Under the pieces are notes generated by a model. That model was not told the origin of the DNA. It ran no database searches and saw nothing but the letters and a program-made list of their open reading frames with translations. Positions 1 to 34,200 of a stretch of DNA of 64,000 bases are shown here, one piece after another. The position numbers and the translations under genes were made by a program. This DNA comes from Macrostomum lignano (Eukaryota): positions 248,001-312,000 of the forward strand of contig NIVC01000889.1 in the NCBI GenBank assembly GCA_002269645.1, read 5' to 3'. Within the stretch, counting starts at the first letter, position 1, and the number at the start of each line of letters is the position of its first letter.

Positions 1-65
1 ACAGACAGACAGACAGACAGACACAGACAGACAGACAGACAGACGGACGGACAGACAGACAGACA

Positions 66-98
<33 letters not shown>

Positions 99-103
99 AC
101 GAA
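1..103. repeat. (CAGA)n/(CAGG)n tetranucleotide microsatellite
   Basis: Direct reading: acagacagac... changing to gcaggcaggc; runs off the window start. Confidence 0.97.
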
Positions 104-736
104 CAGATTCTAAAGAAACTGGAAGCGTAAACAAGTGCAGGAATACGCTCGTAATTATTGCTACTAACCTGTCACCCAATGCTGCTGCTGCATTTGTCAA
201 TGTATATTTAATCATAAAGAATAGACGAGCAAACCAAAAAGCGCATGGTGATTAACATTGTACGAGTCTAGTGAAAATTTGCTCTAAGATATAAGCAATG
301 GCTAAACAGCATTGTATAGACAGGCCAAGCAGCTGTGGCTGCGGGCTTTAAAAAGAAACTTCAAATTTCAGAGATAAAACGCGTTCAGAAGAACTCCAGC
401 AGCTTCAGCCGTTGCAACGCGGCGTTGCGAAAAAAAGTCAATGGAGCAGTTTTAGAAAGAGTTTTATTTATTAAGAACTAAGAGAAGGTTAAATTGTGCA
501 TATATCGTATTGTTAGCATCAACTCAGGAGGTACCGACGTTGGCTGCACGAAAAACACCTCTAGATGACTGGAGCAAAGTCCATATGGTCCCGAATCCCA
601 GCGTACGAATCCCTATCAACAGTGGATTCAATATAAGATGTATAAAAAGCAGCAAAAATATTGAAGTATAACTGCAATAACAAGTGCGTCTGTCTACGTT
701 TGCAGCAATTCAGTTCGGTTCAGTAAAGCAGCTTCA

Positions 737-3700: not shown

Positions 3701-6700
3701 GAAAGAGGGGTTGAAGGACTGACAATAAAACTGATAGACCCAACCTCACGCCGCACGGTTAGGAAAGAGGGGGTTGAAGGACTGACCATAAAACTGATAG
3801 ACCCACCTCACGCTGCACGGTTAGGAAAGAGGGGGTTGAAGGACTGACCATAAAACTGATAGACCCACCTCACGCCGCACGGTTAGGGAAGAGGGGTTGA
3901 AGGATTGACCATGAAACTGATAGACCCTCACGCCGCACGGTTAGGAAAGAGGGGTTGAAGGATTGACCATGAAACTGATAGACCCTCACGCCGCACGGTT
4001 AGGGAAGAGGGGTTGAAGGATTGACCATGAAACTGATAGACCCTCACGCCGCACGGTTAGGAAAGAGGGGTTGAAGGATTGACCATGAAACTGATAGACC
4101 CTCACGCCGCACGGTTAGGAAAGAGAGGGTTGAGGGACTGATGGTTATCACCGCCACACAAAGAAGCAATGACAAAGTGCTATTTGTATATAACTCACCA
4201 ACAAGTCGGTGTTGGTCTTGTTTACATCCCCGGCCAGGCCAAGATAGTCTTGCAGCAGAGCCTGCGCCTGCTCCAGTGTCACATTTATTGGTCGAAGCTT
4301 GGCATCGATTTCCTGACTAAGCTGTTGCAGCTCTCGTTTGATAGCTGGCAGGCGACTTGAAAAAAATGTCTGCGCCTGGTTCAAGTCCGTATCCGCCTTG
4401 GCTAGATTGTTGCTGGCCTCGTCCAGCATCCGGCTCAGATTCTGCATCAGGCGCTGGTTTGTCTGGCTCAGCTACAGTGTAGATTGTAGATTGTGTGATA
4501 ATGGAGACTTAGTTTTTGTACAAGTAAGCAGATATGAGGGCCCAGAAGAGTATCCGTTTAACAATGATCACTCACACCAGGTCCGAGAAGGGTCTCTAGA
4601 TATCGCACAAGCCGGGTCGCCCTGTCCCTGGCCCTCTCCAGCTTGCCTCGGACATCGCCAACAGCGCTGATGTTCGGAGTCTGGTCGAACAGAGTTTCAA
4701 TGATGGCCAACTCGGAGCGAAGATCGTTGACCAGCTGTTGAACAACGCCGTAGCAGTCCGGGCACTCCGGGCAGCCGCGTGCGACGTCGAACCGGTTTTC
4801 AGCGCAGCGATCGCACTTGGCGCCAACAATGTGCTGCTTGCAGCTGCACTGCCCGCTGGCGTCGCAGATGGCCTGTAACAGGATGAGCAAGTAAGTGGGT
4901 AGGTATTTAGGTAGGTAGGTAGGCGGTTAAGTAGGTGAGCAGAAAGGTAGCAACGGTAATAGTGTAGTAGCAGTAATGTGCGAGTTGTAGTATTGTAGTA
5001 ATAAACAATAAGTAATCATAGTAGTAATCATAAAAAGTGATATTAATACATGCATAAATAGCACAGTAGTGTGATGAGTAGAGCCAGCAGCAGTACATAC
5101 CTGAGCGGGGTCCCGGATGCCCAGCGGGTTGCACTGGCAGGGTGTGCAGCCGCGCTCGGTGAAGTTAAAGAAGCCGGGCAGGCAGGAGTCGCACTTCAGC
5201 CCGCCCACTCCGGACAGGCAGCTGCAGGCGCCGGTGTCGGCGTGGCAGGTGGCGGAGCCGCCGGTGCCGGTGTAGTTGCAGGCGCAGGACTCGCAGCCTG
5301 TCCCGCTGCTGATGTTGAAGAAGCCCTGCTGGCAGGTGTCGCACCGGCGTCCGTCCACATTTGGCAGACACTGGCACTCGCCGCTGACCGGGTTGCAGGT
5401 GGCTGTCAGGTTTGTGCCGGCCGGATGGCAGCCGCAGGAACGGCACTTGACTCCGCTGGTGGCCAATGCGTTGCCATAGTAACCATTTTTGCAGCGCTCG
5501 CACTTGTCACCGCCGGTCTCGTGGATACATTTCGTGCACACGCCCGTGTCTGGGTGACACACCTGGGTGAGAAAGGAGTGGGATGAATACAGATGATGAG
5601 GAGAATGGGGATCAATACAGGTGATGAGGAGAATGGGGATCAATGTAGGTGATGAGGAGAATGGGGATCAATACAGGTGATGAGGAGAATGGGGATCAAT
5701 ACAGGTGATGAGGAGAATGGGGATCAATACAGGTGATGAGGAGAATGGGGATCAATACAGGTGATGAGGAGAATGGGGATCAATACAGGTGATGAGGAGA
5801 ATGGGGATCAATACAGATGATGAGGAGAATGGGGATCAATACAGATGATGAGGAGAATGGGGATCAATACAGGCGATGAGGAGAATGGGGATCAATACAG
5901 GTGATGAGGAGAATGGGGATCAATACAGGTGATGAGGAGAATGGGGATAGCTACAGATGGGAATAAATAGTCAAATCCCCGTTCACTCGAAATCCCAAAT
6001 CCACATTCGCACCTGCAGATCGTTGGGATCAGTATTGCCGTTGCACTCGCACCTGCGGCAGTTGGGCGGCCTGCCGTAATAATTCAACGCGCAGGTGTCG
6101 CATCGAATTCCCGACAGGCCCTCCGGGCAGCGGGTGCAGATCACCTGGCCTCTACGCAGATCCTGAGCGCAGGTGGAGTTGCCGGGGCACGGGCAGGGCT
6201 TGCAAGCGTCTGGAACGCCGCTAGACGCGTTGCCATAGTAACCATCGGCGCACTGGTCGCATTTGAAGCCGACGGTGTTGTGATCGCAGATCCGGAGCTC
6301 CTTGGGGTCGAGGCCGCGGCCCTCTACTCGGCCGCACTCGCCTGTGGCGAGAGGGATATGGCAGGAATCATGGTAACTAATTTTGAGCTGGTCCCATCTC
6401 TTCAGTCAGATCCAGGCAATTGAGATTCCCGTCTGTACATACGGCTCGTAGTCCCATCTCCCACAATGCTATCCCATTCCGTAGTCCATATCTCATCTCC
6501 CAATTCATAGGTCCCAGCTCTAGCCCCATCTACCAATCGAGAGATCCCATCTCGAGCCCCACTTCCCAATCAAAAGATCCCATCTCGAGCCCCACTTCCC
6601 AATCAAAAGATCCCAGCTCTAGCCCCACTTCCCAATCAAAAGATCCCATCTCTAGTCCCACTTCCCAATCAAAAGATCCCATCTCGAGCCCCACTTCCCA

Positions 6701-9700
6701 ATCAAAATATTCCATCTCAAGCCCCACTTCCCAATCAAAAGATTCCATCTCAAGCCCCACTTCCCAATCAAAAGATCCCATCTCGAGTCCCACTTCCCAA
6801 TCAAAAGATCCCATCTCTAGTCCCACTTCCCAATCAAAAGATCCCATCTCTAGTCCCACTTCCCAATCAAAAGATCCCATCTCTAGTCCCACTTCCCAAT
6901 CAAAGAATCCCATCTCAAGCCCCACTTCCCAATCAAAAGATCCCATCTCGAGCCCCACTTCCCAATCAAAATATCCCATCTCTAGTCCCACTTCCCAATC
7001 AAAAGATCCCATCTCTAGTCCCACTTCCCAATCAAAAGATCCCTTCTCTAGTCCCACTTCCCAATCAAAAGATCCCATCTCTAGTCCCACTTCCCAATCA
7101 AAGAATCCCATCTCTAGTCCCACTTCCCAATCAAAGGATCCCATCTCGAGTCCCACTTCCCAATCAAAGAATCCCATCTCGAGTCCCACTTCCCAATCAA
7201 AGGATCCCATCTCTAGTCCCACTTCCCAATCAAAGGATCCCATCTCTAGCTCACCAGTCTCGCTGTTGCACGTGGCCGAATGATTGAAGCAATCGCAGGG
7301 CACGCAGGCCCCGTAGGGTCCGGCGTTCGGCACCGACCTCCGGTAGCCGTCCTTGCAGCGCTGGCACATGGGCCCCGTGTGACCCTCCGGACAGTCGCAT
7401 TTGTGCATCGTGATGGCGTCTGGAGCGCCTGCCGCTGCGGCAGTCCTGGGCACCGTGCCCTCCAGTGTGATGCTGTGCAGGCTGGCAAATACTACAGGGT
7501 GGTTGGTGGGGGTTGCTCTCCCTGTACCCTTCGCGATCTCTGTGACATCTTTGTCCCTCTCTGATCTCCGCCTGTCTCTCTGATCTCTCCGCCTTTCTCT
7601 CTGATCTCTCTGTCTGTCTCTCTGATCTCTCCGCCTGTCTCTCTGATTCTCTCCGCCTGTCTCTCTGATCTCTCTGTCTGTCTCTCTGATCTCTCGGTCT
7701 GTCTCTCTGATCTCTCTGTCTGTCTCTCTGATCTCTCTATCTGTCTCTCTGATTCTCTCTGTCTGTCTCTGATCTCTCTGTCTGTCTCTCTGATTCTCTC
7801 TGTCTGTCTCTCTGATCTCTCTGTCTGTCTCTCTGATTCTCTCCGCCTGTCTCTCTGATCTCTCTGTCTGTCTCTCTGATCTCTCTATCTGTCTCTCTGA
7901 TTCTCTCCGCCTGTCTCTCTGATTCTCTCCGCCTGTCTCTCTGATCTCTCTGTCTGTCTCTCTGATCTCTCTGTCTGTCTCTCTGATCTCTCGGTCTGTC
8001 TCTCTGATCTCTCTGTCTGTCTCTCTGATCTCTCTGTCTGTCTCTCTGATCTCTCCGCTTGCCTCTCTGATCTCTCTGTCTGTCTCTCTAATCTCTCGGT
8101 CTGTCTCTCTGATCTCTCTATCTGTCTCTCTGATCTCTCTGTCTGTCTCTCTGATCTCTCTGTCTGTCTCTCTGATCTCTCCGCTTGTCTCTCTGCTCCC
8201 TCGGCCTGTCTCTCTGATCTCTCTATCTGTCTCTGAAGCAATAAAGTCATAAATTAGTTTTCGACAGTAAAACCGCCACTTGCTACTTAAACAACTAAGT
8301 AGAGTGTACCGCGCACTGAATTGGACAATAAATATTTTCCTCTCTCCAATTCTTCTCACTTAATCCACCGCTATTGGCGCCGCGAAAGTTGGCCCGAACT
8401 CGAATCTGGGTCAGGCCGGCCAGCACGTTGCGGAAAAGTTCGCGCGAGTCGCTCAGCCGATGCCATACGGAGCTGGCGGGGTCGTGCGCGAGGCGGAAGG
8501 CCAGGCTGAACCGGCCCTGCCTCGGCTTGTCGGGGCCTTGCGACGAGTCAAACGAGGCGGAGAACACCAGCCCGCGAGACTCCAGCTCGACGTCCTTAAG
8601 ACCGGACCGGCTGTCCGGTGTGGGGTCCTCGGGCAGGGACATCAACAGCCGCAGCTGCCGGTTGTAAGAGCCGGACTGATCGCCCAGCATTGAGGGCGGC
8701 AGGGTGAAGTACAGGGTGTTGTAGGGCGGCTCCAGACCCACCTGCGGGTTTGAGGGGTGACGCTTAGTATTGGCGAAGTGATGGCAAACATCGGTTAAGC
8801 TAAAATACACTGTCACTCTAACACTGTCACTTCAGCAACGTCACTCCAACACCGTCACTCCAACACCGTCACTCCAACACTGTCACTCCAGCGCCATCAC
8901 TCCAATACTGTCACTCCAACACTGTCACTCCAACACCATCACTCCAATACTGTCACTCCAACACTGTCACTCCAACACCGTCACTCCAACACCGTCACTC
9001 CAACACTGTCACTCCAGCACCGTCACTCCAACACTACATTAATCGGTTAAGCTAAAATACACTGTCACTCTAACACTGTCACTTCAGCAACGTCACTCCA
9101 ACACCGTCACTCCAACACCGTCACTCCAACACTGTCACTCCAGCGCCATCACTCCAATACTGTCACTCCAACACTGTCACTCCAGCACTATCACTCCAAT
9201 ACTGTCACTCCAACACTGTCACTCCAACACCATCACTCCAGCACTGTCACTCCAACACTGTCACTCCAACACCGTCACTCCAACACTGTCACTCCAACAC
9301 CGTCACTCCAACACCGTCACTCCAACACTGTCACTCCAGCACTGTCACTCCAACACCGTCACTCCAGCACTGTCAATCCAACACCGTCACTTCAGAACTA
9401 TCACTCCAATACTGTCACTCTAACACTGTCACTCCAACACCATCACTCCAGCACTGTCACTCCAACACCGTCACTCCAACACTGTCACTCCAACACTGTC
9501 ACTCCAACACTGTCACTCCAATACTGTCACTCTAATACTGTCACTCCAGCACTGTCACTCCAACACTGTCACTCCAGCACTGTCACTCTAACACCGTCAC
9601 TCCAACACTGTCACCCCACACGGGCACCCACCAAAGCAGCTGCAATGCGTCTCTCGGGGTACATCTCCACCGCGTCAGCCGCCGAGACGTTCTGCTCCTC

Positions 9701-12700
9701 CTCCACAGTCAGGCCATCTATTCTACGTCGAACGAAGCCGACGCCCCAGGGCCGTTTCGTCTCGTCGGTAAAGTTCTCGACGGTGTCCTGGAGCGACATG
9801 GCCGGGTGTAACTGGCAGCTGGTGCTGTGCCCGTAGCAGAAGCACTGCTGGCAGCCGTCTGGATCGGTGGCGCTCAGGCCGAAGAAGAACGACCGGCACT
9901 CGTTGCACAGACGGCCGACGGCGTTCGGCTTGCATCGACATTCGCCAGTTATGGGATTGCACTCGCCCGTGTTGTTCACCGTGCCTTCGGTCGCGCAGCC
10001 GCAAGGTCTTGAAAGAATGACGGTGTTGGAGTGACAGTGTTGGAATGACTTTGCTGGAGTGACAGTGTTGGAGTGACAGTGCTGGAGTGACAGTATTAGA
10101 GTGACAGTATTGGAGTGACAGTGTTGGAGTGACAGTGCTGGAGTGACAGTGTTGGAGTGACAGTGTTGGAGTGACGGTGTTGGAGTGACGGTGTTGGAGT
10201 GACGTTGCTGAAGTGAAGGTGTTGGAGTGACAGTGCTAAAGTTGACAGTGTAACAGTGTCAGGGTGACGGTGTTTGGTGACTGTTAGAGTGACTGTGTTG
10301 GAGTGACACTGTTGGAGTGACACTGTTGGAGTGACTGGGTTGAAGTGACAGTGTTAGAGTGACTGTGTTATAGTGACTGTGTTGAAGTGACAGTGTTGGA
10401 GTGATAGTTTTGGAGTGACTGTGTTGGAGTGACTTTGTTGGAGTGACTGTGTTGGAGTGACTTTGATGGAGTGATTGTGTTGAAGTGACGATGTTGGAGT
10501 GACAGTATGGGAGTGACAGTATGGTAGTGACACTGTTAGAGTGACAGTGTTAGAGTGAAGGTGTTGGAGTAACGGTGAGTACTGGGACAGTTTCAGATAG
10601 TGTGAGTTGACAGTGGGATATTCAAGAGTGTTGTCTTGAAATTTTCGCTGTGGATTTCGCAACTAGCGTAGTCGAAGCGTAAAGTGAAATTTTGCCTAAG
10701 CACTTCAACAGTCGAGAGTGCCTCAAATTGGAAATCTCGATGCGCAATTCTCGTCAAATTTTCTCCTAAGCCCCGTTCACTGGGATACTGGCGATAAATA
10801 CTGTCCCAGTTTAGCTACCAACATTGCACCAGCTTGTACCGCAGTGCCGATGGTTAGGGATGGGGGGTAAGGGACACCTACACTTCAGCAGCCTCATTCA
10901 TTCTTCCTCTTCTTCATGACTTGGGGGCCTTGGCATGGCAAATTCACCATGGCAATGACTGAACCGCCGTCCACCGCTAGCCCAGCCCCTTCGTCTGTGC
11001 GCTCCCCGTGTGGTACCGATCGATAAACGTTGGACCAGGCTGATGTGCGACCAGGGTGGGCTGGGTTCCATTGCGCAAAGAAGACAGGAGGATTCACCCA
11101 TCCCTCATTCCCTCTCTCTCTCCTCTCTTTCTCCTCCCTAACCAACCCAGTTCTTCCCCATCCCATTCGAATTCGATAGCAGAAAGGTTTCAAGCAATGC
11201 GCCGAATTTGGGACAAAGAACCCCAACGCAACATTGCAATTTCAGGCCACATTTTATATCGACATATTGGAAAGCGCTAATGAAATTGTTTAGTAGGAGG
11301 TTTAAAATACAAAAACAATTACACTTATTCTACTGAAAAAGAGTTCGAGCAAACATTTACATGTCAGATATTCCATATCTGTTTCCTGTGTTAGCCTGGA
11401 GTCATGCGGCCTTTTTATTTCTTTGCGTGAGCAAAGATCTGCCGTCAATGCTTCAGTCGTGCCTAGAAGCCCATAGTTTGTTAAGGTTTTCGTTATCTAA
11501 AAGACTGCTCAGCCCTGATAGGTGAGGCAGCACCGAATAGCTTGTAAGAAGAACCAAATTGAAGAGGCCGGTTGAGCACCAGAGAAACAGTGGCGGGGAG
11601 GTCAGGCCAGTGACAGAAAAGCAGGCAAGGGTCAGACTCTATCTATTAGCTAACTAACTTTCAGCTACTCAATGGACTGATTGCAGCTATTCAAATGCTC
11701 GGTGCAAAAGCACTAACTTAGAGGCTAGTATAAATCTGGATAGATTTAAGGCATCAGAGAGTAATCTGCTCTGAAGGGTTTGATACTTTTAATCACCAGT
11801 AAATTAAGGTGTTCAGAATGATCATAGGGTTTTCAACATTCGGGCGCAACACACCTTTTGGCGGCATCGTCCCACCGCCAGCGCTTCTGAGGCAACTCTG
11901 CCTATTCCGCTGACTTCTAAGCACATACATGTACAAGCACGCCAATACTGCAGTACGCAGGCACGCACTCGTACACACGCTCACACTGGGTGTACAGCCA
12001 GCCCTGACTTTCTGATCGTCAGACATGTACACTTTCTGTGCTTTGGGAGCTGGCCATCATGGGTGTGAATCACACGACACTGTTCAAACGGACTGACTAT
12101 GAATGAAAATCGAGAAAGCAGTCGAACTTACTTGCATCCGCTAGCCGTCAGATTGTAGTAACCCGTCAGGCACCTGTCGCACTTGTCCCCAGTGACTCCT
12201 GGCTGACAGACGCACCGTCCCTGATCGTCGCACTGGCCGTGCTGCGACCCCACAGGATGGCAGTTGCAGGCGACGCAGCCGCTGGCGCCGGGCGTTGGTC
12301 GCCTGTGATTCGGCAGGCAGCGTTCGCAGTGCGGACCTTCGGTATTGTCGCGACAATTGACGCATCGTCCGCCGCTGACGTTGCCGCTGGCGTAGTACAG
12401 GTCCCAGTCGAACTGGCACTGCTCGCTGTTGCCGGAGCAGTTACACGGCCGGCACTCCCACGCGTTCTCCTGTGTGGCGGCGCGCCAAGGCCTGTCGTTA
12501 TAGTCTTTTCGGCATTTCTCGCACTGGATGCCTTCGGTGTTGTGCTGACAGGAGCAGGAGCGCTCCTGAGTGGTTGGATTGGTGTTGCAGACTGCCGCGT
12601 GACCGTTGCACTGGCACCGGCCGCCCACAGTGATGTCCGTGATGGCGTAGAAGTACTTGTAAAGCACGTCGGCGCTGAACGTGTCGCCGTGGGTGTTGAG

Positions 12701-14302
12701 CCGGTCGAGACTGATCAGGATGTCCGAGGCGAGGACCCAGTCCTGCGCGGCGTGGGGCATGGAAGGGGACAGTTACTAAGTTAGATTGACACGTTTCTGA
12801 AGTATCTGAGGATAGCTGATGTCCTGAAGTATCTGGGCGTAGCTGAGGTCCTGAAGTATCTGAGGGTAGCTGAGGTCCTGAAGTGTCTAAGGGTAGCTGA
12901 GGTCCTGAAGTATCTGAGGGTAGCTGAGGTCCTGAAGTATCTGAGGGTAGCTGAAGTCCTAAAGTATCTGGGGTAGCTGGGGCCCTGAAGTATCTGACGG
13001 TAGCCGTGAAGCTGTATAAGTAGTTGATTGCATTCTTGAAGGACCAAGAGTGCAGTGGCCCAGCAATCAATTCAAGAACTCGATCCTTGCCTGCATTCTG
13101 TCGTCTTTCCAGAAGCCGTCCTTGTCATTGACATCCAGCCGGTCCATCAGGGACACGAACAGCACGTTTCCATCAGTGAGTGGCACCATGTCGGAGAAGT
13201 GTGACTTGCAGACGGGCTGGTACTTGTTGCCATCCGTGATTTGTTCGTCCGAGATCATTTTGTACTGGGCCTCACAATTGCGGCTGAAATAGGCCCACGG
13301 CTGCCAGGGCAGGTTGCGCTTCTTTCGCCGGTAGATAGCCATGCTGTGAGGCCTGGGCGAGTGGAACAGCAGTCGGATGTAGGTGACCTGCGTCTGGATG
13401 CCTGGGATGGAAGGGCAGTCAAAACTTGGATGAAAATTAGTTAATTAAAACATTGAAAACTGGCATTGTTTGTGATTGTGAATCATAAATAATTTTTCAA
13501 GTAAAACTAAAACATTCAGGAAAAAATATAGCAAAAAATTATATAAAAAACGGAATCGAAATTGGACTGATTGGGAAAACTTTAATGCACACATTTCAAT
13601 TTAGTGTTAGGTTTTAAATATTTTCGTAACAATACTAAAGTTCAAAATATAAAAAATATAACTTTTGTTTTTAAAGGAAATTATATCAATAAAGTTGAAA
13701 CTAAATAATCAGATTTTTTATACTTTTTATATCTTTAAAGTAAATAAAAAAAGTTTTTCTTGAAAAAGCAAGTAAAAACGACAATTTTTTCATAGATAAA
13801 TGGAAAAATTGATATTTTAGTATTTTCTACAGTAAATTTGGCAATCAATTTGCTCACCAAAGTCAATAGTAATATTGACATTAAATTTGCTGCTCCTTGT
13901 TGGAGTTTCATACAGAGTCTGACTTTGCCAGAATGTCTTCCACGGATTTTCTCTGTTGAAGTCGGTCAGAAACTTGGCGCTGTGAGATTTGTCCCGCTCG
14001 GCCTCGGAGCAATAGAAGCAGTACCGATCCTGAATGGAGGTCGCCTGAATTGACGTTTGAACGCAGAATCTTTCCCGACTTGTCATTCCGCACGTGTTCG
14101 AAGCGACTGGCTCTCTACCGTAAGCAAGATTCCAGAATTTTGTCAAGCACATTTTCGGCTTTCGATTTTTATAACACTCGGAGACATTTTCGTTGCTCCC
14201 GATCGGATCGCCAGGGGTACCGGAGGATTGGGCTCTGGCTGTGCTAATCAAGAAAATTACTAGAATAATTACAGCTAACAAATTTTGGCTAAGTTGCCAC
14301 AT
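737..14302 (-). CDS. LAMC1: Laminin subunit gamma (gamma-1/LanB2-like), complete 15-exon gene, ~1682 aa
   Basis: Exons read by eye (minus): 14302-13858, 13401-13091, 12742-12132, 10007-9632, 8741-8369, 7491-7255, 6341-6013, 5562-5101, 4872-4576, 4471-4199, 3538-3282, 3105-2844, 2661-2398, 1821-1563, 1029-737. Total 5049 nt, all phases compatible. Domains: signal peptide (MWQLSQNLLAVIILVIFLISTARA), LN domain ([53 protein letters not shown]), LE repeats, one L4 domain, more LE repeats including an NTDPN loop, then a long coiled coil with a short Cys-containing tail. The donor at 8369 is the least certain (alternative near 8360). Confidence 0.93.
1200..1469 (-). mobile_element. tRNA-derived SINE, copy 1 (last laminin intron)
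   Basis: Reverse complement of the copy at 61689-62000, with a degraded tRNA-like head, the central gtgtccttgagcaagacacttaac...cagctgtaaaatggg segment and the 3' cacatctggccc segment. Confidence 0.85.
2080..2310. repeat. Intronic minisatellite, 22-bp unit (gatcacagacacggatgtaact)
   Basis: About 10 tandem copies inside laminin intron 1822-2397. Confidence 0.92.
3585..4140. repeat. Intronic minisatellite, ~58-63-bp unit
   Basis: About 9 copies of gaaggactgaccataaaactgatagacccacctcacgccgcacggttaggaaagagggggtt inside laminin intron 3539-4198. Confidence 0.92.
5578..5950. repeat. Intronic minisatellite, 28-bp unit (ggggatcaatacaggtgatgaggagaat)
   Basis: About 13 copies filling laminin intron 5563-6012. 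Confidence 0.93.
6505..7250. repeat. Intronic minisatellite, 33-bp unit (cccacttcccaatcaaaagatcccatctcgagc)
   Basis: About 22 copies abutting the donor at 7254; produces the spurious EMGSFDWEVGL / SSPTSQSKDPI ORFs. Confidence 0.95.
7555..8236. repeat. Intronic minisatellite, 21-bp unit (ctctctgatctctctgtctgt)
   Basis: Fills laminin intron 7492-8368; produces the spurious REIRETD ORF. Confidence 0.95.
8808..9614 (+). repeat. Intronic minisatellite, 14-bp unit (tgtcactccaacac), with one ~250-bp higher-order duplication
   Basis: Fills laminin intron 8742-9631. The unique anchor atcggttaagctaaaatacac occurs at ~8790 and again at ~9041. Confidence 0.95.
10018..10580 (-). repeat. Same 14-bp minisatellite in inverted orientation (gtgttggagtgaca)
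   Basis: Reverse complement of the 8808-9614 unit; starts ~10 bp from the splice acceptor at 10008-10009. Confidence 0.95.
12790..13005. repeat. Intronic minisatellite, 27-bp unit (gctgaggtcctgaagtatctgagggta)
   Basis: About 7-8 copies in laminin intron 12743-13090. Confidence 0.9.
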
Positions 14303-15950: not shown

Positions 15951-18900
15951 ATGTTCTTTGATGACGGTAAGTAACATTGGAAAACTGCTTTTAATGGACT
16001 CAGACTCAATTTGGGTTGTCTTAAGATTATTAAAAATTTAGCGTACTAGGTAACGACATTTCTTGAGACTCGTCAAAGATTTCTCAAATCAAATGAGTCG
16101 CATCTTTTTTGCTGCGTTCTGATCTAGTTACAAGTTTCTTAGGGGAATTATTAGTTTCTCAAGGGAATTACGAGCTTCTCAATGGTATTACTAGCCTCTT
16201 AAGGGAATTACTAGTTTCTCAACGGACTTACTTAAGGGAATTACTAGTTTCTCAACGGACTTACTTAAGGGAATTACTAGTTTCTCAAGGGAATTACTAA
16301 AGCTTCTCAAAAGACTTACTAGTTTCTCAAGGGAATTACATGCTTCTGAAGGGAATTACGAGCTTCTCAAGGGAATTAATAGTTACTCATGGCTTTGCAA
16401 AACTCTTGCAAATGAAAGTTTTCAGGCAGGCTTAGAACCATCTAATTAAGATTTCACCTGTGGCACATGGACCTGTGTGATGATAACCAGATGGTTAATA
16501 AAGTTCAGTTAATTGTGAGAAAGTGGCAAGATTTGTAGCACAACGCAATCCATATACTAAAAATGGTCTGTCGGTAGGTAGGTATGTTGTGTGTGATCGA
16601 TTTCAGAAAAAATGGCTCAACTGATTTTCTTCAAACTTGGATTAGGATTAGTTTTTTTTACGTTTTTTTCGGTTTACTAATAGTAGTAGCGAACATTTTG
16701 CCAAAATTGACGGACATCTCATACCTGCAGAATCCAGCAGCGGTGCCAGCCTGTTTGCCCAGCTGCTGGCCGGCATGATGCAGCAGCAGCAGCGCCAGGA
16801 GCAGGGTCGCAACAATAAAATGTTGCTGTTCAAGGCCGCCATCGAGGGCAACGGGTCCATGTGCCAGCGGTTAGTCGCTTCCGGAGTTGACCCAGACGTA
16901 CAACACGAGAAAGGCCTGAGGCCGCTGCACCTGGCCGCGCACCAGGGCCACGAGAAAACTGTGGCGGCGCTGCTCGACGCTGGCGCCAACGCGGACGTCA
17001 CTGACGAAGACGGCGACACCCCGCTGATGGTGGCGATAATGCAGAAGGAGTGGCAGACAGCTCGACTGTTGATTGAACGAAACGCCGAACTGCGATTGAA
17101 GAACAATAACGGCTACACGGCAGCGGATTTGGCGTTGGCCAAGGGCAACCTCGGCCTTGTCAAGATGATGGAGCGCAAGAGGCCGGCGCTGCAGTTGAAC
17201 GGCCGAATGAACGGCTCACAGCTGCTGCAGGTGACAAAATGATTTTATTGAAAATGCACTGTACTAAAATATAAGGACGCTGGGCTTGAAAACGGTGTAT
17301 GGGGAGAGCATTGAACACAAGGCACGGCCAACCATATTCAACCAAAGCTGTGACGATTGTCTATGGCCAAAACCGTGATGGGGGCATTGAATTCAAGACA
17401 GCCAACCATATTCAACCAATGCTGTGACGATTGTCTATGGCCAAAACTGCGTATGGCGGGCATTGAATTCAAGACCTCGAGCAGTTGAATTCAGACTTTA
17501 AATTCAGAACCATTTGCAAAAATTGATAAAGGTAATTGACTGTTTTTCATGCTCATAAAGCGAACAAGTTAAAACTGCAACTGTAACTAAACTGTCAGCA
17601 GTCTCAAAGCAAAGAAAAAACCAGTACATTCCTTTTAGGCCAATGCATTTTAAAGCCACATTGGGCATTCAATTCAAGGTGTTACTTGAGACAAAACAGA
17701 CATTCTACAGTTGAGACATCTCGTGCTTTTAGGATCCCTGGGCTGAAAAATTGTGACTTATTTATCTTTCATCATTTCTTTCAATTGTTTGATACTATTG
17801 ACGGTCGCATTCGAAGAACAGTGCAATATGAGTGCAGAATTTGGTGGTGCATTTACCAGGCCGCCCAGGACGGAAACGACGACCTCATCGGGTTCTGGTT
17901 GGACCAAAACCCTGACCGGTCGGCGTGCAACGTTCAACTCAAAGACGGCCGAACCCTGGCGTTTGTGGCCGCCCTGAACGGTCACTTGGACATCATCGAG
18001 CGGCTGGAGCGATGCCGCGCCGACTACAACATCGCCGACAGCGAGGGCAACATTCCGCTGTTCTGCGCCGCCCAGAATGGCCACGACAAGATTCTGAAAA
18101 TCCTCATCAAACGAAGCCGGGTGAATCATCGCAACGAGAACAAGCGAACCGCTCTGTTCTCCGCCGTGCTAAACGGACGCGAGACGGCCATGAAGATGCT
18201 GCTAGACGCCGGAGCCGACACTGACGCGGCCGACTGTCAGGGCCTGACGCCGCTCGCCTGCTCCATTGTCAGCAACAACCCTGACCGGATTGTCCGTCTG
18301 TTGGCCAGTCGGACCAAAGACCTGAGCTTCGTGGACAAGAATGGCTACGGGTATGCTCATCTGGCCGTTATCTCCCAGCGCCTGCCTGTGCTCAAGACCC
18401 TGCGCAGTCACGGCATAATTCTCGACACGCCCAACACCGGCGACGGCGAGACGCCGCTGCTGGCAGCCTGCCAGGTTGGACCGCTGGAGACTGTTGAGTA
18501 CCTGCTGAAAGAGGGCTGCAACTCCGGGCATCAGAACAATCACGGCGTGAGTCCGGCTCTGCGGGCTGCCTACTGCAACCAGGAGGACATCCTGCGCCAT
18601 CTGGTCAATCACGGAGCTCCGTTGGATCTGAAAAACCGCAAGGGCGAGACGGCGATTCTGTGCGCGGCGGAGAAAAATAGCTTCTCTATGGTGCAGCTGC
18701 TGCACAGACGCGGCTGCAACCTCCGCGTGGCCGATCGCTCCGGCATGACGGTGGCTCACTACGCTGCCAAGCACGCCAACCACGAGCTGCTGGGCTACCT
18801 GGATCAAAACGGCGTCGCTCTGGACAAGCCGGACTCCGACGGCCAGACGCCGCTGATGATGGCCGCCGGCGCTGACGACATGAACTGCACAGTTGTGCGC

Positions 18901-21523
18901 CTGCTGGTCCGCGCCGGCGCCAACGTCGATGCGCGGAACAATAAAGGAAAGAATGCGGCTCAGATTGCCAACGGTCAGGGCAACCGGCACCTGGTGCACC
19001 TGCTGCAGTCGGGAGGCATCAGCGACCAGTAAGTTCTCGTATCATATGCTAGCTCCTGCCAAGGACTACTCAAGTAGAAGGACTGGAAACAACATTTCTT
19101 AGAAAATGTTTAGGAGGCTGGTTTTCGCCGAAAAATACACTATGGAGGCAGACCCAATGTTCTAAATGAAAAGCTTTATGAATATCCATAGAGCTATAAG
19201 AAAAGCACAACGTATCAAGAGATAAACATCGGGTCTGCCTCTTATCGAAAGCAATAACAATTTTAATATAAAAAAGCGAAAAGTTACTATATTCATGGTG
19301 TGTTTTTTCAGTGAAAACCAGCCTCCTAAACATTTTCTAAGAAACGTAGTTTCCCGTCCTTCTACTTGAGTACTCGTAGTCCTTGGCTCGTACATGTAAA
19401 GTAGAGGCAACTTGAGTCGAAAGGCGCAAAATCGTGAAAATCACAATGCAATTTTAAGTTTTGTAATCAATAAAGCCACTATATCTGTCCATAAGTACTT
19501 CCGAATTTACGCCTAATCCGAGGTTGAGTGGTAAAATTACCTTGTTGAGAATGATTAACTCTCGTTGACGCTCCTTCCAACAACACACAGGCCGAAGAAC
19601 CCGCCTCCGTCGTACCCGAAGCCTCCCAGGGAGTCGTCAACCCCGAGAGCTGAAATTGACGAAAACTTCGACACCTGGGACTTCTTCATCGAGGAGGGCG
19701 ACAAGAAGAAGCCAATCGGCAGCGGCGGCTTCGGCAAAGTCTACAAAGCCTTCACCGATCGGCACCAGTTCGTTGCCGTGAAGGTCATCAAACCCATGGG
19801 CAATATGGACAGCGCACAGCGGCGCCAGATCTTCCTGCAGGAGAAGCAGGCCATGGATTTGCTGCGTCACGTCCGCCACGAGAACATTGTTCGCTTCCTC
19901 AAAGCCGAGGAGAAGGATGGAAAGTTTTACATCTTTTCCGAGCTACTTTCTGGCTACACCATCCAGGAGATTATGTTTAAACAGAAGAAGCCAATTGACG
20001 AAGGCGGCATTAAGAGGTTCACTATTCAGGTTAGTAAATCAGTAGCAATTGCGCTTACAATAAGCTCAAATACCTTTCCGTTGTCTCTTTCTAGGCTCTA
20101 ATTAAATGAGCGTAGAATCTTTACTGCGTCTCGGGACTGATACCGAGATGTTTCGGGACTGATACCGAGATGTCTCGGGACTGATACCGAGCTGTTTCAG
20201 GACTGATACCGAGCTGTTTTGGGACTGATACCGAGCTGTTTCGGGACTGATACCGAGCTGTTTCGGGACTGATACCGAGATGTCTCGGGACTGATACCGA
20301 GATGTCTCGGGACTGATACCGAGCTGTTTCGGGACTGATACCGAGCTGTTTCGGGACTGATACCGAGCTGTCTCGGGACTGATACCGAGCTGTCTCGGGA
20401 CTGATACCGAGCTGTCTCGGGATTGATACCGAGATGTCTCGGGACTGATACCGAGATGTCTCGGGACTGATACCGAGCTGTCTCGGGACTGATACCGAGC
20501 TGTCTTGGAACTGATACTGAGATGTCTCTGGACTGATACCGAGATGTCTCGGGACTGATACTGAGATGTCTCTGGACTGATACCGAGATGTCTCGGGACT
20601 GATACTGAGATGTCTCGGGACTAAGACCGAGATGTCTCGGGACTAAGACCGAGATGTCTCGGGACTAAGACCGAGATGTCTCGGGACTAAGACCGAGATG
20701 TCTTGTGACTGATACCGAAATGTCTCGGGACCGATACCGATCTGTCTCGGAACTGATACCGAGACGTCTCGGGGCTGATATCGAGCTGTCTCGGGACCGA
20801 TGCCGAGATGTCTCGGGACCGATACGAGATGTCCCGTTGGTTCTATAGTCGACTGATCTGACCAGTTATTGACTGGTCTGATCAGTTATTGACTGGTATG
20901 AACAGTTATTGACTGATCTTACTGAGATTGAATAAGACAGAAACGTGGGACTTTCAATGATTCTAATACGCAGTGGAAATCTACTCAGAAGTTGCAAGTA
21001 AAGTTAACCTTCCTTTGACAGACAGGAGAATTATAACTATGCGCGTAAATTGCAGGTATGCCAAGCCTTGAGCCACCTGCACAGCCTCCCAAAGCCAATC
21101 ATCCATCGCGACATCAAGTCGTCAAACATCATGCTGACGAACCCGGGCATCGTCAAGCTGATTGACTTCGGTTTCGCTCGCGAGATCAGCAACTCGCAGA
21201 TGATGATGACTCGGACCCAGTGCGGCACCCCGTTCTTCATGGCGCCGGAGATACTCGCTCCGATGAACGAAGGCGTCGCCTACACGTCCAAGACGGACGT
21301 GTGGGCTCTTGGCTGCACAGTCTTCGAGATGGCCACAATGGAGCCGCCAAACTCGGAGATTCAGGCGCTATTTTTTCTGGGAATCGTCGTGTCCAGCAAG
21401 CCGATGCCAAAGATTCCGGGGGCGTCCGCTGAACTGCAGGATTTCTACCAGCTGTGCGTGGAACGCGAGCCCAGCAACCGTCCAGAGGCGTCTCGGCTGC
21501 TGCAGCACAAGTTTTTGAAGTGA
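15951..21523 (+). CDS. Ankyrin-repeat (about 15 repeats) plus C-terminal Ser/Thr protein kinase (STE11/MEKK- or NEK-like), ~863 aa
   Basis: Exons 15951-15966, 16731-17230, 17860-19028, 19591-20029, 21056-21523; 2592 nt, phases 1,0,2,0 all compatible. Ankyrin motifs include LHLAAHQG, TPLMVA, PLFCAAQNG, TPLLAACQVG. Kinase motifs are intact: GSGGFG, VAVK, HRDIKSSN, DFG, GTPFFMAPE, DVWALGC. The kinase ORF has no own ATG and its acceptor (cacag at 19590) needs a phase-2 donor, which CA|GTAAGT at 19028 supplies. The first micro-exon is less certain. Confidence 0.8.
16130..16390. repeat. Degenerate ~20/33-bp tandem repeat (gaattactagtttctcaagg)
   Basis: Direct reading; lies in intron 1 of the ankyrin-kinase gene. 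Confidence 0.75.
16549..16645 (+). mobile_element. Isolated 5' fragment of the non-autonomous Helitron family at 50-59 kb
   Basis: A|TCCATATACTAAAAATGGTCTGTCGGTAGGTAGG...GATTTCAGAAAAATGGCTCAACTGATTTTCTTCAAACTTG matches the 5' end of unit 2 (reverse complement of 55940-56037). No 3' hairpin or CTAG seen. Confidence 0.7.
20125..20835. repeat. Intronic minisatellite, 22-bp unit (gggactgataccgagatgtctc)
   Basis: About 32 copies in kinase intron 20030-21055. Confidence 0.95.
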
Positions 21524-31233: not shown

Positions 31234-34200
31234 CAGTGGTGGGAGTGAGGAGTGCCCATTTTTTCACGCCTACAATTTTTTTTGCACCGCAAGTTTTTTG
31301 TGTCAATCTTTTTTTGCCATACATTGACTATATAATGTTCAAAAGAGTAACTCTGATTGAAAAAAAACGATTGTTGTGTTGTTGCAACAGCTTGACTATA
31401 ATTTAACATCGTAGTCATAGACAATAGTGCGCTACTCGCACTCGTGGGTCTCGTGTATTGCATTTTATTAGGTCTTACAAATGAATTATTTAAATGAAAG
31501 TTATTGAATTGCTAAAGATTAAATTCGAAATAATCGTAACTTGCATTTGTTATAATTCAAGCTAGACTAAATCTAGTATATGAAATCAAAAGCTATATAC
31601 GAGAGCATATCTAACTTTGGAAGATGTAATTTTAAGCAAGTAAAAGGCAACTAACATAGCATTAGCCTAAAAAAACATTACGACTAATTGTTCAATATTG
31701 TCATTGTCACGCTGTTATTATCCAGAGCGGAACTTTTTCTGTTAAACGCTTTCTGGCAGAGGGTTCGACAATGACTGCTCAATAGCTCGATGCTTGAGCA
31801 CCGTCTCAGTGATTTTCTCGGCCTGTTTCAGCTTCTTCTTCTGCAGCTTGTCTTGTCTGTGTTGCAGGTCGTCCAGCTCACGATCTCGGTCCTCCTTCGC
31901 CTTAGTCATTTCCAGCAACAGCTTCTGAGCATCATCCCTCTGCTTTTTCTTTATCTGCTCGTTAGTCTCCAGAACAGAATTTTCTAAGTCTGTGAATGTC
32001 TTGCTTGCGCTTTTCTCATTTCGAATTTCAGAGAGGACACTCTTCTTGAGCTCTTCCCTCTTCTTGCGCTCCTCTTCTTGCTTCTCTTCTAGCCGTCGGC
32101 GGTACGTAGCATAGGCGCTGTTGCACAGGTTCTGCAACCTAAGCGAGACTGGTAGCGTAGCAGCTGTCCAACATTTAGCAGCAAGGCAAGAGTGCGCGAC
32201 AACTAGTGCCTTAATGGTGTGCGCTCCAAGAGTGGAGCGCTTCTTTGTAACGACATCATTAAGATTGCTGAAAATTCTCTCAACTTCCGCGTTGCCATGC
32301 GGCAAGACGAATAGCACACATACTATGCGCATAAGAAGTGGGCGATTGCCAACTGCGGCAACCTTTCCCTAGAAGTTACTAGCCGATTCGGATTCAATGT
32401 CTAACTCAGCAATCAGCACATCTTGTTGATGAGCACAAGCCTCAACTCGCAACATGTCGAGCTCGCTTGCTGTCATGATTGTTGGTAGCTGCCTGGCAAT
32501 GGTATCAACCCACTGAACAAACCGTTTGTCTGCTTTTTGGATCCAGCAGTTGGCAGGCACAAAGAGTGGAGCTGCTCAGCGGCAAATATTCAAAGAGTTT
32601 CTCTGTTCCCTTTACAAAGAACGCTTTCACCAAAGCTAGACAGGCCTGTTGGTCACTAGCAGACATCTCAATGAAGAGACGCCTAGCCTGCTCCCCCATG
32701 CCGATTTGCAGATGGGGCAGCCAAATTGAACTGTCCTTTAAATCCAGCTTCTAGACTTTGGCGGGTAGTTTGACTGGTGAGACAAAGCGCAACAGCCAGC
32801 AGCGTGTCAGGTCATTCAGCACTTTGTACAGCCGGAATATTTGGCAGTCTTCTTGTTGGAACAACAGCTCAAACTTCTGCAGAGGACGCAAAACTTCGAA
32901 CAAAAATAGAAGAAAAAAATCGACTTTGGGGTCACAAACTTGGGCCTTGAGTGTGCTAAATTTTACGCCATGCTCCTTAGTTGCAGAGTTGAAGAAGTAC
33001 TTTTTTAGAGGCTCTAACAGTCGCAAAACTCGTTCAACTACCGGCAACAGCTGCAGCCAATAGGTGTCAACTGGCCGAATAAATGCCAGCTTTCGCACTT
33101 CATCGAATTCAGTTGCAATGACATGTAAGCGGTCCTTTTCGTCAAGCAAAAACTTGAAATGGCAATAGAGGTCGCGCACTAGTGTCTCCACGCTGAGACC
33201 TAAGTCCAAAGCGTCGCAAGTGTTTTTTGCGGCGTTGTGGATGTGATGAAGGCTGCAGCCGCCTACATCAATGATATTTCGAAGGTCATCCCGAAGTCAA
33301 ACTACTACTCCGCTCTTGAAGCCCCGCATGGTGTTGCAGCTGTCCGACATCACTCCGACACACTTTGACTTGTTGAGGTTGCACTCCAAAATCATCTGCA
33401 AAACAGAAGCAGAAATAGCTGCGGCAGTTGTAGAAGACAACATAGGCAAATCTATGCAGACTGATTTGGCCTTCATGGTTTTTTTGGTACTATTTTCTGA
33501 AAGATATCGCAGAAGGATGCTGAGAAACTTTCCATTCTTATTGGCTTCATCAATTTGCACTGAAAAAAAGCCTGAGTCTGGTGACTTGCTGTTGCTGCAA
33601 ACATCGGCCAGAATAACCTCTTTCAGGTAGGGAAAGAGGCCGTGAGACACGAGGTAAGAAATCTTTGATCGATGAAGCTGTATTGCAGTCGGAAACTTGG
33701 AGTCGGGACAAATCGCACGTAAGTCCTCAACAGCGTCATCCTTAGACTCAAAGCTACGATTTTTAATAATAATCCTTGTGATAAAATGAATTTCCAAGAC
33801 TTTCGCAGAGTGACTTAAGTCATTTGGCTCGCAAGACCCGCCAATACTCTGATCAGCCTGGCCTGCGGATGCCCCTGCCATCAACATCTTGAGAGAGCTG
33901 CTGCTCCGACGGGCCTTCGAAATTTCGCGATGACTTACTGCCTGTGAGTGGCTCTTAAAGTTTGTAATGCCACTTCGAAAAACAAAATCAACATTACACC
34001 AGGCACAATCTGCTTTAAAGTCGTCTCGCTTACGTGCCCAAAGACCAATGACGTCACCATTATAGTCGAGCTTATTTAACCAATTGTTGTTCCATTGAAC
34101 ACGCTTCGCCAAGCTTAATTTTAATAACAATTGTCAGTAGCACTGGAAGGCGAAAATGGAAGAGATGCTGTAGTGAAAACTATTAGTCTATGAGTGTTGT

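What the first reader, a model, noticed from the sequence alone, without database searches (positions are those of the whole stretch)
15951..21523. Hidden ankyrin-array/MAP3K-like kinase fusion, with a built-in kinase-less isoform
Seen: four separate ORFs splice into one 863-aa frame with ~15 ankyrin repeats, a Pro-rich linker (PKNPPPSYPKPP) and an intact kinase. The linking donor CA|GTAAGT contains the in-frame TAA, so retention of intron 3 yields a 562-aa ankyrin-only protein. Established: animal ankyrin-kinases (ILK, TNNI3K, RIPK4, ANKK1, LRRK, DAPK, Shark) use TKL, CAMK or TK domains. The motifs here (HRDIKSSN, GTPFFMAPE, DVWALGCTVFEMAT..PP) look STE11/NEK-like. Inference: an unusual, possibly lineage-specific sensor-kinase architecture.
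Basis: partly seen in the sequence, partly recalled or inferred. Interest (0 to 1): 0.7.

Follow-up and report, generated by a model that had tools for sequence, protein, structure and literature searches.

The report
Flatworm ankyrin-repeat protein kinase gene
This is a real, already annotated five-exon gene of the flatworm Macrostomum lignano that joins 16 ankyrin repeats to an active-looking protein kinase of a genus-specific family; the proposed "built-in kinase-less isoform" is only a generic side effect of the splice-site consensus.

Summary
The gene model is correct. Five GT..AG exons (15951-15966, 16731-17230, 17860-19028, 19591-20029, 21056-21523) give an 863-aa protein with 16 ankyrin hairpins, a disordered Pro-rich linker and a kinase with every catalytic motif.

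It is not hidden. The window is Macrostomum lignano Mlig_3_7 contig NIVC01000889.1. The protein is identical to GenBank PAA74415.1/PAA75360.1 (BOX15_Mlig023526g2/g3), whose annotation comes from RNA-seq transcripts.

The fusion is supported in four ways:
- The kinase exon has no Met before its Gly-loop and catalytic Lys.
- Three paralogues keep the same ankyrin-then-kinase order.
- An intron-free cDNA-like contig from a relative carries one ankyrin+kinase ORF.
- Two genomic copies differ by 22 synonymous and 4 non-synonymous changes.

The kinase belongs to a Macrostomum-restricted clade. A published orthogroup holds 73 entries from 4 species. The clade is STE-like but falls outside the MEKK/STE11 and STE20 clades in a small tree, so "MAP3K-like" is not established.

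The TAA after the exon-3 donor is generic. Any phase-2 intron with a GT[AG]A donor stops at once, and all 13 introns checked in four family genes stop within 40 codons. No 562-aa product is on record. This is an ordinary, uncharacterised lineage-specific kinase gene of modest interest.

The parts
15951..15966 (+). Coding exon 1 (ATG plus 13 nt, aa 1-5.3), donor GACG|GTAAGT, phase 1
   Evidence: Splice map reproduces deposited protein P0241 exactly.
15967..16730 (+). Intron 1 (764 nt, 36% GC), with a 20-nt minisatellite at 16128-16389
16731..17230 (+). Exon 2: N-terminal tail plus ankyrin repeats 1-4 (aa 6-172)
   Evidence: tblastn 100%.
17231..17859 (+). Intron 2 (629 nt), with a 74-nt direct repeat at 17327-17475
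17860..19028 (+). Exon 3: ankyrin repeats 5-16 (aa 173-561.7), ending CA|GTAAGT in phase 2
19029..19590 (+). Intron 3 (562 nt, phase 2). If retained it reads CAG TAA. It contains a 354-nt foldback at 19043-19396
19591..20029 (+). Exon 4: Pro-rich disordered linker (aa 563-582), conserved D-x2-F-x2-W pre-kinase motif and kinase N-lobe (Gly-loop 605-610, K626, E646). No in-frame Met before residue 69 of this exon
20030..21055 (+). Intron 4 (1026 nt, phase 0), at a position conserved in all paralogues examined. It holds a 22-nt x 32 minisatellite at 20128-20833
21056..21523 (+). Exon 5: kinase C-lobe (HRDIKSSN 725-732, DFG 745-747, APE 771-773, R850) and TGA stop

Best explanation
Window 15951-21523 (+) is one protein-coding gene of Macrostomum lignano, BOX15_Mlig023526g2/g3 on NIVC01000889.1 at about 263951-269523. 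Its five exons encode a soluble 863-aa protein in three parts: an N-terminal solenoid of 16 ankyrin repeats, a ~26-residue disordered Pro-rich linker, and a C-terminal Ser/Thr kinase domain that looks catalytically competent.

Shown:
- the exon structure;
- identity to the transcript-derived GenBank model;
- the domain content and the intact catalytic residues;
- purifying selection between genomic copies;
- membership of a kinase clade found only in Macrostomum so far. Many members of that clade carry N-terminal ankyrin repeats, one has two kinase domains, and the sister gene has a different helical N-terminus.

Inferred:
- By analogy with other ankyrin-kinase proteins, the ankyrin solenoid is the partner-binding or regulatory module. 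It would recruit the kinase to its targets or restrain it. The kinase would phosphorylate Ser/Thr in an STE-like signalling role.
- The in-frame TAA at the exon-3 donor is a by-product of a phase-2 GTAAGT donor, not a designed switch.
For: - Gene model: the splice map reproduces the 863-aa protein. It equals P0241 (PAA74415.1/PAA75360.1) with zero differences. The annotated range equals the finding's coordinates, and L003 is identical to window 5951-31523.
- Origin of the annotation: StringTie/TACO transcripts were cut at SL trans-splice and poly(A) sites by TBONE (PMC5730564).
- No independent kinase start: the first Met in the exon-4 frame lies after the Gly-loop and VAVK. The SL's terminal ATG joined at 19591 is out of frame. 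An in-frame stop lies at 19556.
- Paralogues: Mlig024438 and Mlig002250 have the same ankyrin-linker-kinase order, a phase-2 linker intron, and the kinase-internal phase-0 intron at ..Q|[IV]C.
- Transcript evidence in a relative: contigs L001/L002 from two sequencing runs carry an uninterrupted 877-aa ankyrin+kinase ORF. They are collinear with the Mlig024438 exons and lack the introns.
- Selection: 22 synonymous versus 4 non-synonymous differences between the g1 copy and the window copy, while introns are 4-12% diverged with indels.
- Catalytic and family-specific residues are invariant in 12 family members.
- Structure: 16 ankyrin hairpins at pLDDT ~90 and a disordered linker. The best fold matches are the ankyrin-B/R solenoids, and RNase L matches across both the ankyrin and the kinase-fold parts.
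- Lineage restriction: an exhaustive search of 1.84 billion representatives shows that every close single-domain hit looked up is M. lignano, apart from one unnamed cDNA-like contig. Identity then drops to <=41%.
- Orthogroup OG0000013 has 73 entries from 4 Macrostomum species.
Against: - I saw no RNA-seq read or cDNA contig for this particular gene. Two look-ups found none. The 19028/19591 junction therefore rests on the published transcript-based annotation, on sequence logic and on paralogues.
- No expression, localisation or activity data were found.
- The kinase part of the model has low confidence over aa 722-765, which covers the catalytic loop and activation segment. This probably reflects the 12-sequence alignment.
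- The roles assigned to the ankyrin solenoid and the kinase are by analogy only.
Confidence: 0.85

Rival explanations
1. Regulated retention of intron 3 deliberately produces a 562-aa ankyrin-only protein that acts as a kinase-less (for example dominant-negative or scaffold) isoform.
For: - The unspliced reading gives CAG TAA straight after exon 3, so the product would be a clean ankyrin-only protein.
- The same phase-2 GTAA donor is present in paralogues Mlig024438 and Mlig002250.
- A very stable 354-nt foldback lies 14 nt downstream of the donor and could in principle affect splicing.
Against: - The stop follows automatically from a phase-2 intron with the consensus donor GT[G/A]AG, which was found in 122,399 of 187,627 donor regions (PMC8629364).
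- All 13 introns of four family genes stop within 0-40 codons on retention.
- No 562-aa protein appears among database hits or cluster members, although the GenBank annotation kept alternative transcripts with different CDS.
- A stop codon upstream of two exon junctions would normally mark such an mRNA for nonsense-mediated decay (general knowledge).
Confidence: 0.07
2. Two separate genes, an ankyrin-only gene and a kinase gene, were wrongly fused by the transcript assembler. They could, for example, lie in an operon resolved by SL trans-splicing at 19591.
For: M. lignano has operons, and about 7% of assembled transcripts are polycistronic precursors (PMC5730564). I saw no read evidence for this junction myself.
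Against: - No Met precedes the Gly-loop and catalytic Lys in exon 4. The SL ATG is out of frame and stops after 21 codons. An in-frame stop lies at 19556.
- The acceptor ACACAG does not fit the trans-splice motif [T/C]TNCAG (sequence read).
- TBONE cuts at SL sites, yet it left this model whole in three genomic copies.
- Paralogues and a relative's cDNA-like contig have the same fused ORF.
Confidence: 0.03
3. A decaying duplicate or pseudogene in a highly duplicated genome, with no function.
For: The assembly carries three near-identical copies of the locus. M. lignano has large recent duplications (PMC5730564).
Against: All copies keep the full ORF and all splice sites. Substitutions are 22 synonymous to 4 non-synonymous, while introns have diverged 4-12% with indels. 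Catalytic residues are invariant across paralogues.
Confidence: 0.03

Closest known systems
Macrostomum paralogues (BOX15_Mlig024438, Mlig002250, Mlig014128, Mlig032061, Mlig007464, Mlig032503, Mlig015280; orthogroup OG0000013 of Brand et al. 2020)
   Same: They share the same kinase clade (45-49% identity; 83-96% bootstrap for the clade). They have N-terminal ankyrin repeats and a conserved kinase-internal phase-0 intron. The D-x2-F-x2-W pre-kinase motif and the HRDIK[SC]SN and GCTV.EM motifs are invariant or nearly so.
   Different: The ankyrin arrays differ in length (about 4 to 16 repeats). Mlig002250 has two tandem kinase domains. The sister gene Mlig005235 (62% kinase identity) has a non-ankyrin helical N-terminus and a phase-0 linker intron.
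MEKK-type (STE11) MAP3Ks, e.g. Selaginella MAP3K3, an F-box/WD40 MEKK-alpha-like protist kinase, human MEKK2
   Same: These are the highest-scoring non-Macrostomum single-domain hits (169-171 bits, 39-41% identity). They share the subdomain IX motif D[IV]W[SA][LF]GCTV.EMA.
   Different: Human MEKK2 scores only 113 bits, below STK24 at 147. The family groups with the MEKK clade in only 20% of bootstraps. No MEKK found here carries ankyrin repeats.
GCK-III STE20 kinases (STK24/MST3, STK25, MST4)
   Same: They are the best PDB matches (148 bits, ~34% identity). They share GTPF[WF]MAPE and ..EPPNSE after subdomain IX.
   Different: STE20s have SLGITAIELA where this family has GCTV.EMA. The family lies outside the 95%-supported STE20 clade. 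STK24 is also the second-best PDB hit for a genuine plant MEKK, so this ranking discriminates poorly.
Animal ankyrin-kinase proteins with an N-terminal ankyrin module (ILK, TNNI3K) and RNase L (ankyrin + pseudokinase + RNase)
   Same: The order is the same, with an ankyrin sensor or scaffold N-terminal to a kinase fold. RNase L is the PDB multi-domain structure that aligns across both parts of the model.
   Different: Those kinase folds are TKL or pseudokinases (established knowledge). None is among the top 60 sequence matches. This protein ends at the kinase C-lobe and has no KEN/RNase domain.
Giardia Nek-ankyrin expansion (Manning et al. 2011, PMC3218828)
   Same: Both are lineage-specific expansions of a Ser/Thr kinase fused to variable, evolutionarily mobile ankyrin arrays.
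   Different: In Giardia the kinase is N-terminal and the ankyrin repeats C-terminal, with a TALM repeat signature, and many members are catalytically dead. Here the order is reversed, there is no TALM motif, and the catalytic residues are intact.

Membership tests
Eukaryotic protein kinase (Pfam PF00069), catalytically competent | GxGxxG loop, VAIK Lys, alpha-C Glu, HRD catalytic loop with Asn, DFG, APE, subdomain XI Arg | tested here: met
   Pkinase scores 196 bits over aa 600-862. GSGGFG 605, VAVK 623-626, HRDIKSSN 725, DFG 745 and APE 771 are present. K626, E646, D727, N732, D745, E773 and R850 are invariant in 12 family members.
Ankyrin-repeat proteins | Tandem ~33-residue helix-turn-helix repeats forming a solenoid | tested here: met
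   Ank_2 scores 312 bits in 10 stretches. The model has 16 helix hairpins at pLDDT ~85-95. The best fold matches are the AnkB/AnkR 24-repeat domains, E ~1e-26.
STE11 / MEKK-type MAP3K | Kinase domain groups with MEKK kinases in phylogeny and scores best against them | tested here: inconclusive
   Plant and protist MEKK-like kinases are the best outside hits at ~170 bits, and the GCTV.EMA motif is shared. Human MEKK2 scores only 113 bits, and family+MEKK is recovered in 20% of 300 NJ bootstraps. No curated kinome HMM set was available.
STE20 (GCK-III/MST3-like) | Groups with STE20 kinases; subdomain VIII GTPxWMAPE plus subdomain IX SLGI(T/M)AIE | tested here: not met
   The STE20 clade has 95% bootstrap and excludes the family; family+STE20 is recovered in 9%. 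Subdomain IX reads ALGCTVFEMA, not SLGITAIELA. STK24 is nevertheless the top PDB hit.
NEK kinases | Groups with NEKs in phylogeny | tested here: inconclusive
   NEK1 and NEK7 score 121-124 bits in PDB, and Nek4-like scores 117 bits. Only one NEK was in the tree, and it served as the outgroup. MEKK+STE20 excluded the family in 68% of bootstraps, so a position between NEK and STE cannot be excluded.
TKL-group ankyrin kinases (ILK, TNNI3K, RIPK4/ANKK1) | Kinase domain of TKL type | tested here: not met
   None of these is among the 60 best PDB sequence matches, which are all STE20, NEK, ASK1 or PAK kinases, apart from one PKR-fusion chain.
RNase L / Ire1-like ankyrin-pseudokinase-RNase | C-terminal KEN ribonuclease domain after the kinase fold | tested here: not met
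   The protein ends at the kinase C-lobe (aa 863) and has no further Pfam domain. The structural match to RNase L covers only the ankyrin and kinase-fold parts.
Giardia-type Nek-ankyrin proteins | N-terminal Nek kinase followed by TALM-type ankyrin repeats | tested here: not met
   The domain order is reversed and there is no TALM motif. The family definition is from PMC3218828.

The most novel reading that the evidence does not exclude
The Mlig023526-type kinases are an orphan, Macrostomum-specific kinase family with dozens of genes. A conserved STE-like catalytic module is coupled to interchangeable repeat-domain N-termini: ankyrin arrays of different lengths, a non-ankyrin helical domain, or a second kinase. 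On this reading the family is a diversified recognition-and-signalling repertoire, for example for stress, immunity or reproduction. It would be analogous to the Giardia Nek-ankyrin expansion but would have arisen independently in an animal.
Probability: 0.15. Interest if true: 0.5.

Novelty: new variant of a known kind. Interest (0 to 1): 0.25.

Why it matters
Ankyrin-kinase fusions are a known architecture, so the gene is not surprising in itself. It does document that a free-living flatworm genus has expanded its own kinase clade, one that sits outside the standard STE11, STE20 and NEK families and has recruited ankyrin solenoids. This is a small addition to the catalogue of lineage-specific kinome innovations. 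M. lignano is transgenic- and RNAi-tractable, so the gene could serve as an entry point for functional work. For the scan itself the main value is calibration.

Tried and rejected
1. Direct RNA evidence for this gene. Exact-protein look-up of P0241 returned only the two GenBank contigs. A junction-spanning 263-aa query found no transcript-derived fragment. Both were null, so I relied on the published transcript-based annotation and on the relative's cDNA-like contigs.

2. Expression or function in the literature. 'Mlig023526' occurs in no searchable full text. It is absent from the supplements of PMC5816591 and PMC12896417. It appears only as an orthogroup member in PMC7336406.

3. Kinase classification from the PDB ranking alone. 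I rejected this as biased. A genuine plant MEKK also ranks STK24 second.

4. Ankyrin+kinase hits P0019 and P0080 from the full-length search. They have the kinase N-terminal, the ankyrin repeats C-terminal, and only 68-75 bits to this kinase. They are unrelated.

5. Exon shuffling through a shared phase-2 linker intron as the source of N-terminal diversity. This is not supported, because the sister gene Mlig005235 has a phase-0 intron there.

6. Single-sequence AlphaFold model of Mlig005235 to identify its N-terminal domain. Mean pLDDT was 37.8, so the model is unusable.

7. Paralogue in the same window: none. Rfam families in the window: none.


Full report
**What is in the sequence**

The region 15951-21523 on the + strand has four long ORFs plus a 16-nt ATG-bearing mini-exon. 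They join through canonical GT..AG introns at exons 15951-15966, 16731-17230, 17860-19028, 19591-20029 and 21056-21523. The result is a 2592-nt reading frame of 863 codons plus a stop. The four long exons have 54-62% GC and the introns 36-49%.

Pfam places ankyrin repeats over aa ~36-560 and a protein kinase domain over aa 600-862. An AlphaFold model built on 12 family sequences (mean pLDDT 78) has three parts:
- 16 helix-hairpin ankyrin repeats over aa 36-556, arranged as four repeats, a short break near the exon 2/3 boundary, then twelve repeats;
- a disordered linker over aa 557-582;
- a kinase fold.

The linker begins PKNPPPSYPKPP. The motifs GSGGFG, VAVK, HRDIKSSN, DFG and APE are all present. 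The exon-3 donor is CA|GTAAGT in phase 2, so unspliced RNA reads CAG TAA and would give 562 aa.

**Where it comes from, and whether it is hidden**

The 863-aa protein matches Macrostomum lignano proteins. It is residue-for-residue identical to P0241, which is GenBank PAA74415.1/PAA75360.1, 'hypothetical protein BOX15_Mlig023526g2/g3'. A third copy, g1 (PAA77795.1), differs at four residues.

The locus fetched for P0241 from NIVC01000889.1 (assembly GCA_002269645.1) is identical to window 5951-31523. Its annotated gene range equals the finding's coordinates. The window is therefore NIVC01000889.1 at about 248001-312000, and the gene model is already public.

That annotation is not an ab initio prediction. 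It derives from a genome-guided RNA-seq transcript assembly (StringTie plus TACO). The TBONE pipeline cut these transcripts wherever reads showed spliced-leader trans-splicing or poly(A) sites, and TransDecoder then called the ORFs (PMC5730564).

**Is the ankyrin-kinase fusion real?**

I could not see reads for this gene. An exact-protein look-up returned only GenBank contigs. A junction-spanning query found no transcript-derived fragments. Four independent lines support the fusion.

1. The kinase cannot start on its own. In the exon-4 frame the first Met lies after the Gly-loop and the catalytic Lys. The M. lignano spliced leader ends in ATG (PMC8629364). Joined at 19591, that ATG is out of frame and stops after 21 codons. 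There is an in-frame stop at 19556 in the intron.

2. Paralogues Mlig024438 and Mlig002250 have the same layout. The order is ankyrin, linker, kinase. A phase-2 intron sits in the linker, and a phase-0 intron sits inside the kinase at ..Q|[IV]C. The kinase-internal intron is conserved in both kinase domains of Mlig002250 and in Mlig005235.

3. Two contigs from separate sequencing runs (L001, L002) carry an uninterrupted 877-aa ankyrin+kinase ORF that is 80% identical to Mlig024438. They are collinear with its exons but lack the introns, so they are a spliced mRNA of a relative.

4. The g1 copy and the window copy differ by 22 synonymous and 4 non-synonymous substitutions across the CDS. Their introns are 4-12% diverged with large indels. 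Twelve family members keep all catalytic residues and a D-x2-F-x2-W motif just upstream of the kinase.

**What kind of kinase?**

Against PDB sequences the best matches are STE20 kinases: STK24 at 148 bits, then MST4, STK10 and SLK. NEK1/7, TAO2, ASK1 and PAK1 follow, and there are no TKL, CAMK or TK kinases.

An exhaustive HMMER search of 1.84 billion representatives gave a different picture:
- Every close single-domain hit that I looked up is M. lignano, at 45-62% identity.
- The next best, at ~170 bits and 39-41% identity, are MEKK-type kinases. They include Selaginella MAP3K3, a Diphasiastrum protein, an F-box/WD40 kinase and a diplonemid protein.
- STK25 scores about 137 bits.

As a control, the Selaginella MEKK hits human MEKK2 (9p6a) at 243 bits, then STK24 at 195 and ASK1 at 191. 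The window kinase scores only 113 bits against MEKK2 and 147 against STK24.

Motifs are mixed. Subdomain IX, ALGCTVFEMA, is MEKK/ASK/NEK-like rather than the STE20 form SLGITAIELA. GTPFFMAPE and EPPNSE resemble GCK-III.

In 300 NJ bootstraps of 32 kinase domains:

| Grouping | Bootstrap support |
|---|---|
| Macrostomum family | 83% (96% with Mlig009993) |
| MEKK clade, including human MEKK2 | 88% |
| STE20 clade | 95% |
| Family + MEKK | 20% |
| Family + STE20 | 9% |

I conclude that this is an orphan, STE-like clade. 'MAP3K-like' is possible but not shown.

**Family size and distribution**

At least ten M. lignano transcript clusters belong to the clade. Eight of them, counting the window gene, have Pfam-detected ankyrin repeats N-terminal to the kinase. 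In Brand et al. 2020, Mlig023526.g1 sits in orthogroup OG0000013. That group has 73 entries: 39 from M. lignano, 18 from M. spirale, 10 from M. hystrix and 6 from M. pusillum (PMC7336406).

No comparable protein from another flatworm or phylum appeared in either search. Other ankyrin+kinase hits have the reverse domain order and unrelated kinases. The N-terminal module varies within the clade. The sister gene Mlig005235 has 62% kinase identity but a non-ankyrin helical N-terminus. Mlig002250 has two kinase domains.

**The 'built-in kinase-less isoform'**

The stop is a consequence of intron phase. The M. lignano donor consensus is GT[G/A]AG (PMC8629364). Any phase-2 intron with that donor reads NNG|TAA or NNG|TGA. 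All three phase-2 introns I mapped stop immediately. All 13 introns of four family genes hit a stop within 0-40 codons when retained.

No 562-aa protein is present among database hits or cluster members. The annotation pipeline kept alternative transcripts with different CDS. Such a transcript would also be a typical target of nonsense-mediated decay (general knowledge). The idea is not excluded, but nothing supports it beyond what is true of a large share of introns in this genome.

**Mechanism**

Shown: a soluble two-module protein with an intact catalytic apparatus, under purifying selection.

Inferred by analogy: the ankyrin solenoid would act as the partner-binding and possibly autoinhibitory module, tethered by a flexible linker to a Ser/Thr kinase with an STE-like signalling role. 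The analogies are to the ankyrin-B/R solenoids and to RNase L, ILK and TNNI3K, whose ankyrin module is also N-terminal (and established knowledge). The Giardia Nek-ankyrin expansion is a conceptual parallel with the reverse domain order (PMC3218828).

**Verdict**

This is an already annotated but uncharacterised member of a Macrostomum-specific ankyrin-kinase family. I rate it a new variant of a known kind of architecture, of modest interest.

Noticed in passing
window 19043-19396 (intron 3): A 354-nt foldback with 93-nt arms at 83% complementarity. As RNA it folds at -172 kcal/mol, z = -16 against shuffles. It starts 14 nt after the exon-3 donor. It is conserved at 96% in the g1 copy, is not repeated elsewhere in the window, and has no Rfam match. 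It could be a MITE-like insertion or a long intronic hairpin.
   Followed up: partly
window 20128-20833, 16128-16389, 17327-17475 and many others across the window: Introns and intergenic DNA are full of minisatellites, for example 22 nt x 32 copies in intron 4. Intron lengths differ strongly between gene copies (intron 4 is 1026 nt here and 657 nt in g1; intron 1 is 764 and 1121 nt) while exons are ~99% identical.
   Followed up: partly
window 19604-19615 (aa 567-570): The linker contains PPSY, a canonical PPxY (WW-domain-binding) motif. It is identical in the g1 copy but not conserved in paralogues Mlig024438 and Mlig002250.
   Followed up: no
window 16725-16731 (exon-2 acceptor): The acceptor CTGCAG fits the published SL trans-splice acceptor motif [T/C]TNCAG. 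The SL's ATG joined there would be out of frame (stop after 16 codons), so the true 5' end and start codon (M1 versus M21/M22) remain open.
   Followed up: partly
L006 10001-13952 (NIVC01001141.1): Paralogue Mlig002250 (1180 aa) has an ankyrin array followed by two tandem kinase domains. The first kinase C-lobe and the second kinase N-lobe are encoded in one exon. Mlig024438g1 lies on the same contig.
   Followed up: partly
L008 3001-5707 (NIVC01000013.1): Mlig005235 has the kinase closest to the window gene (62% identity). It carries a ~400-aa all-helical N-terminus with no Pfam match in place of ankyrin repeats. The single-sequence structure model was too poor to identify it.
   Followed up: partly
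window ~1-14300 (- strand); L003, L004, L007: A 1685-aa laminin gene (Laminin_N, EGF_laminin, Laminin_B) lies head-to-head upstream. The same laminin plus ankyrin-kinase pair occurs on three contigs (NIVC01000889, 000949, 000723), consistent with the known large-scale duplication of the M. lignano DV1 genome.
   Followed up: partly
window 38352-42839 (+) and 31742-32332 (-): Exons of an importin-alpha gene (IBB, Arm, Arm_3 domains) lie downstream. There is also a weak hAT-transposase dimerisation-domain remnant.
   Followed up: no
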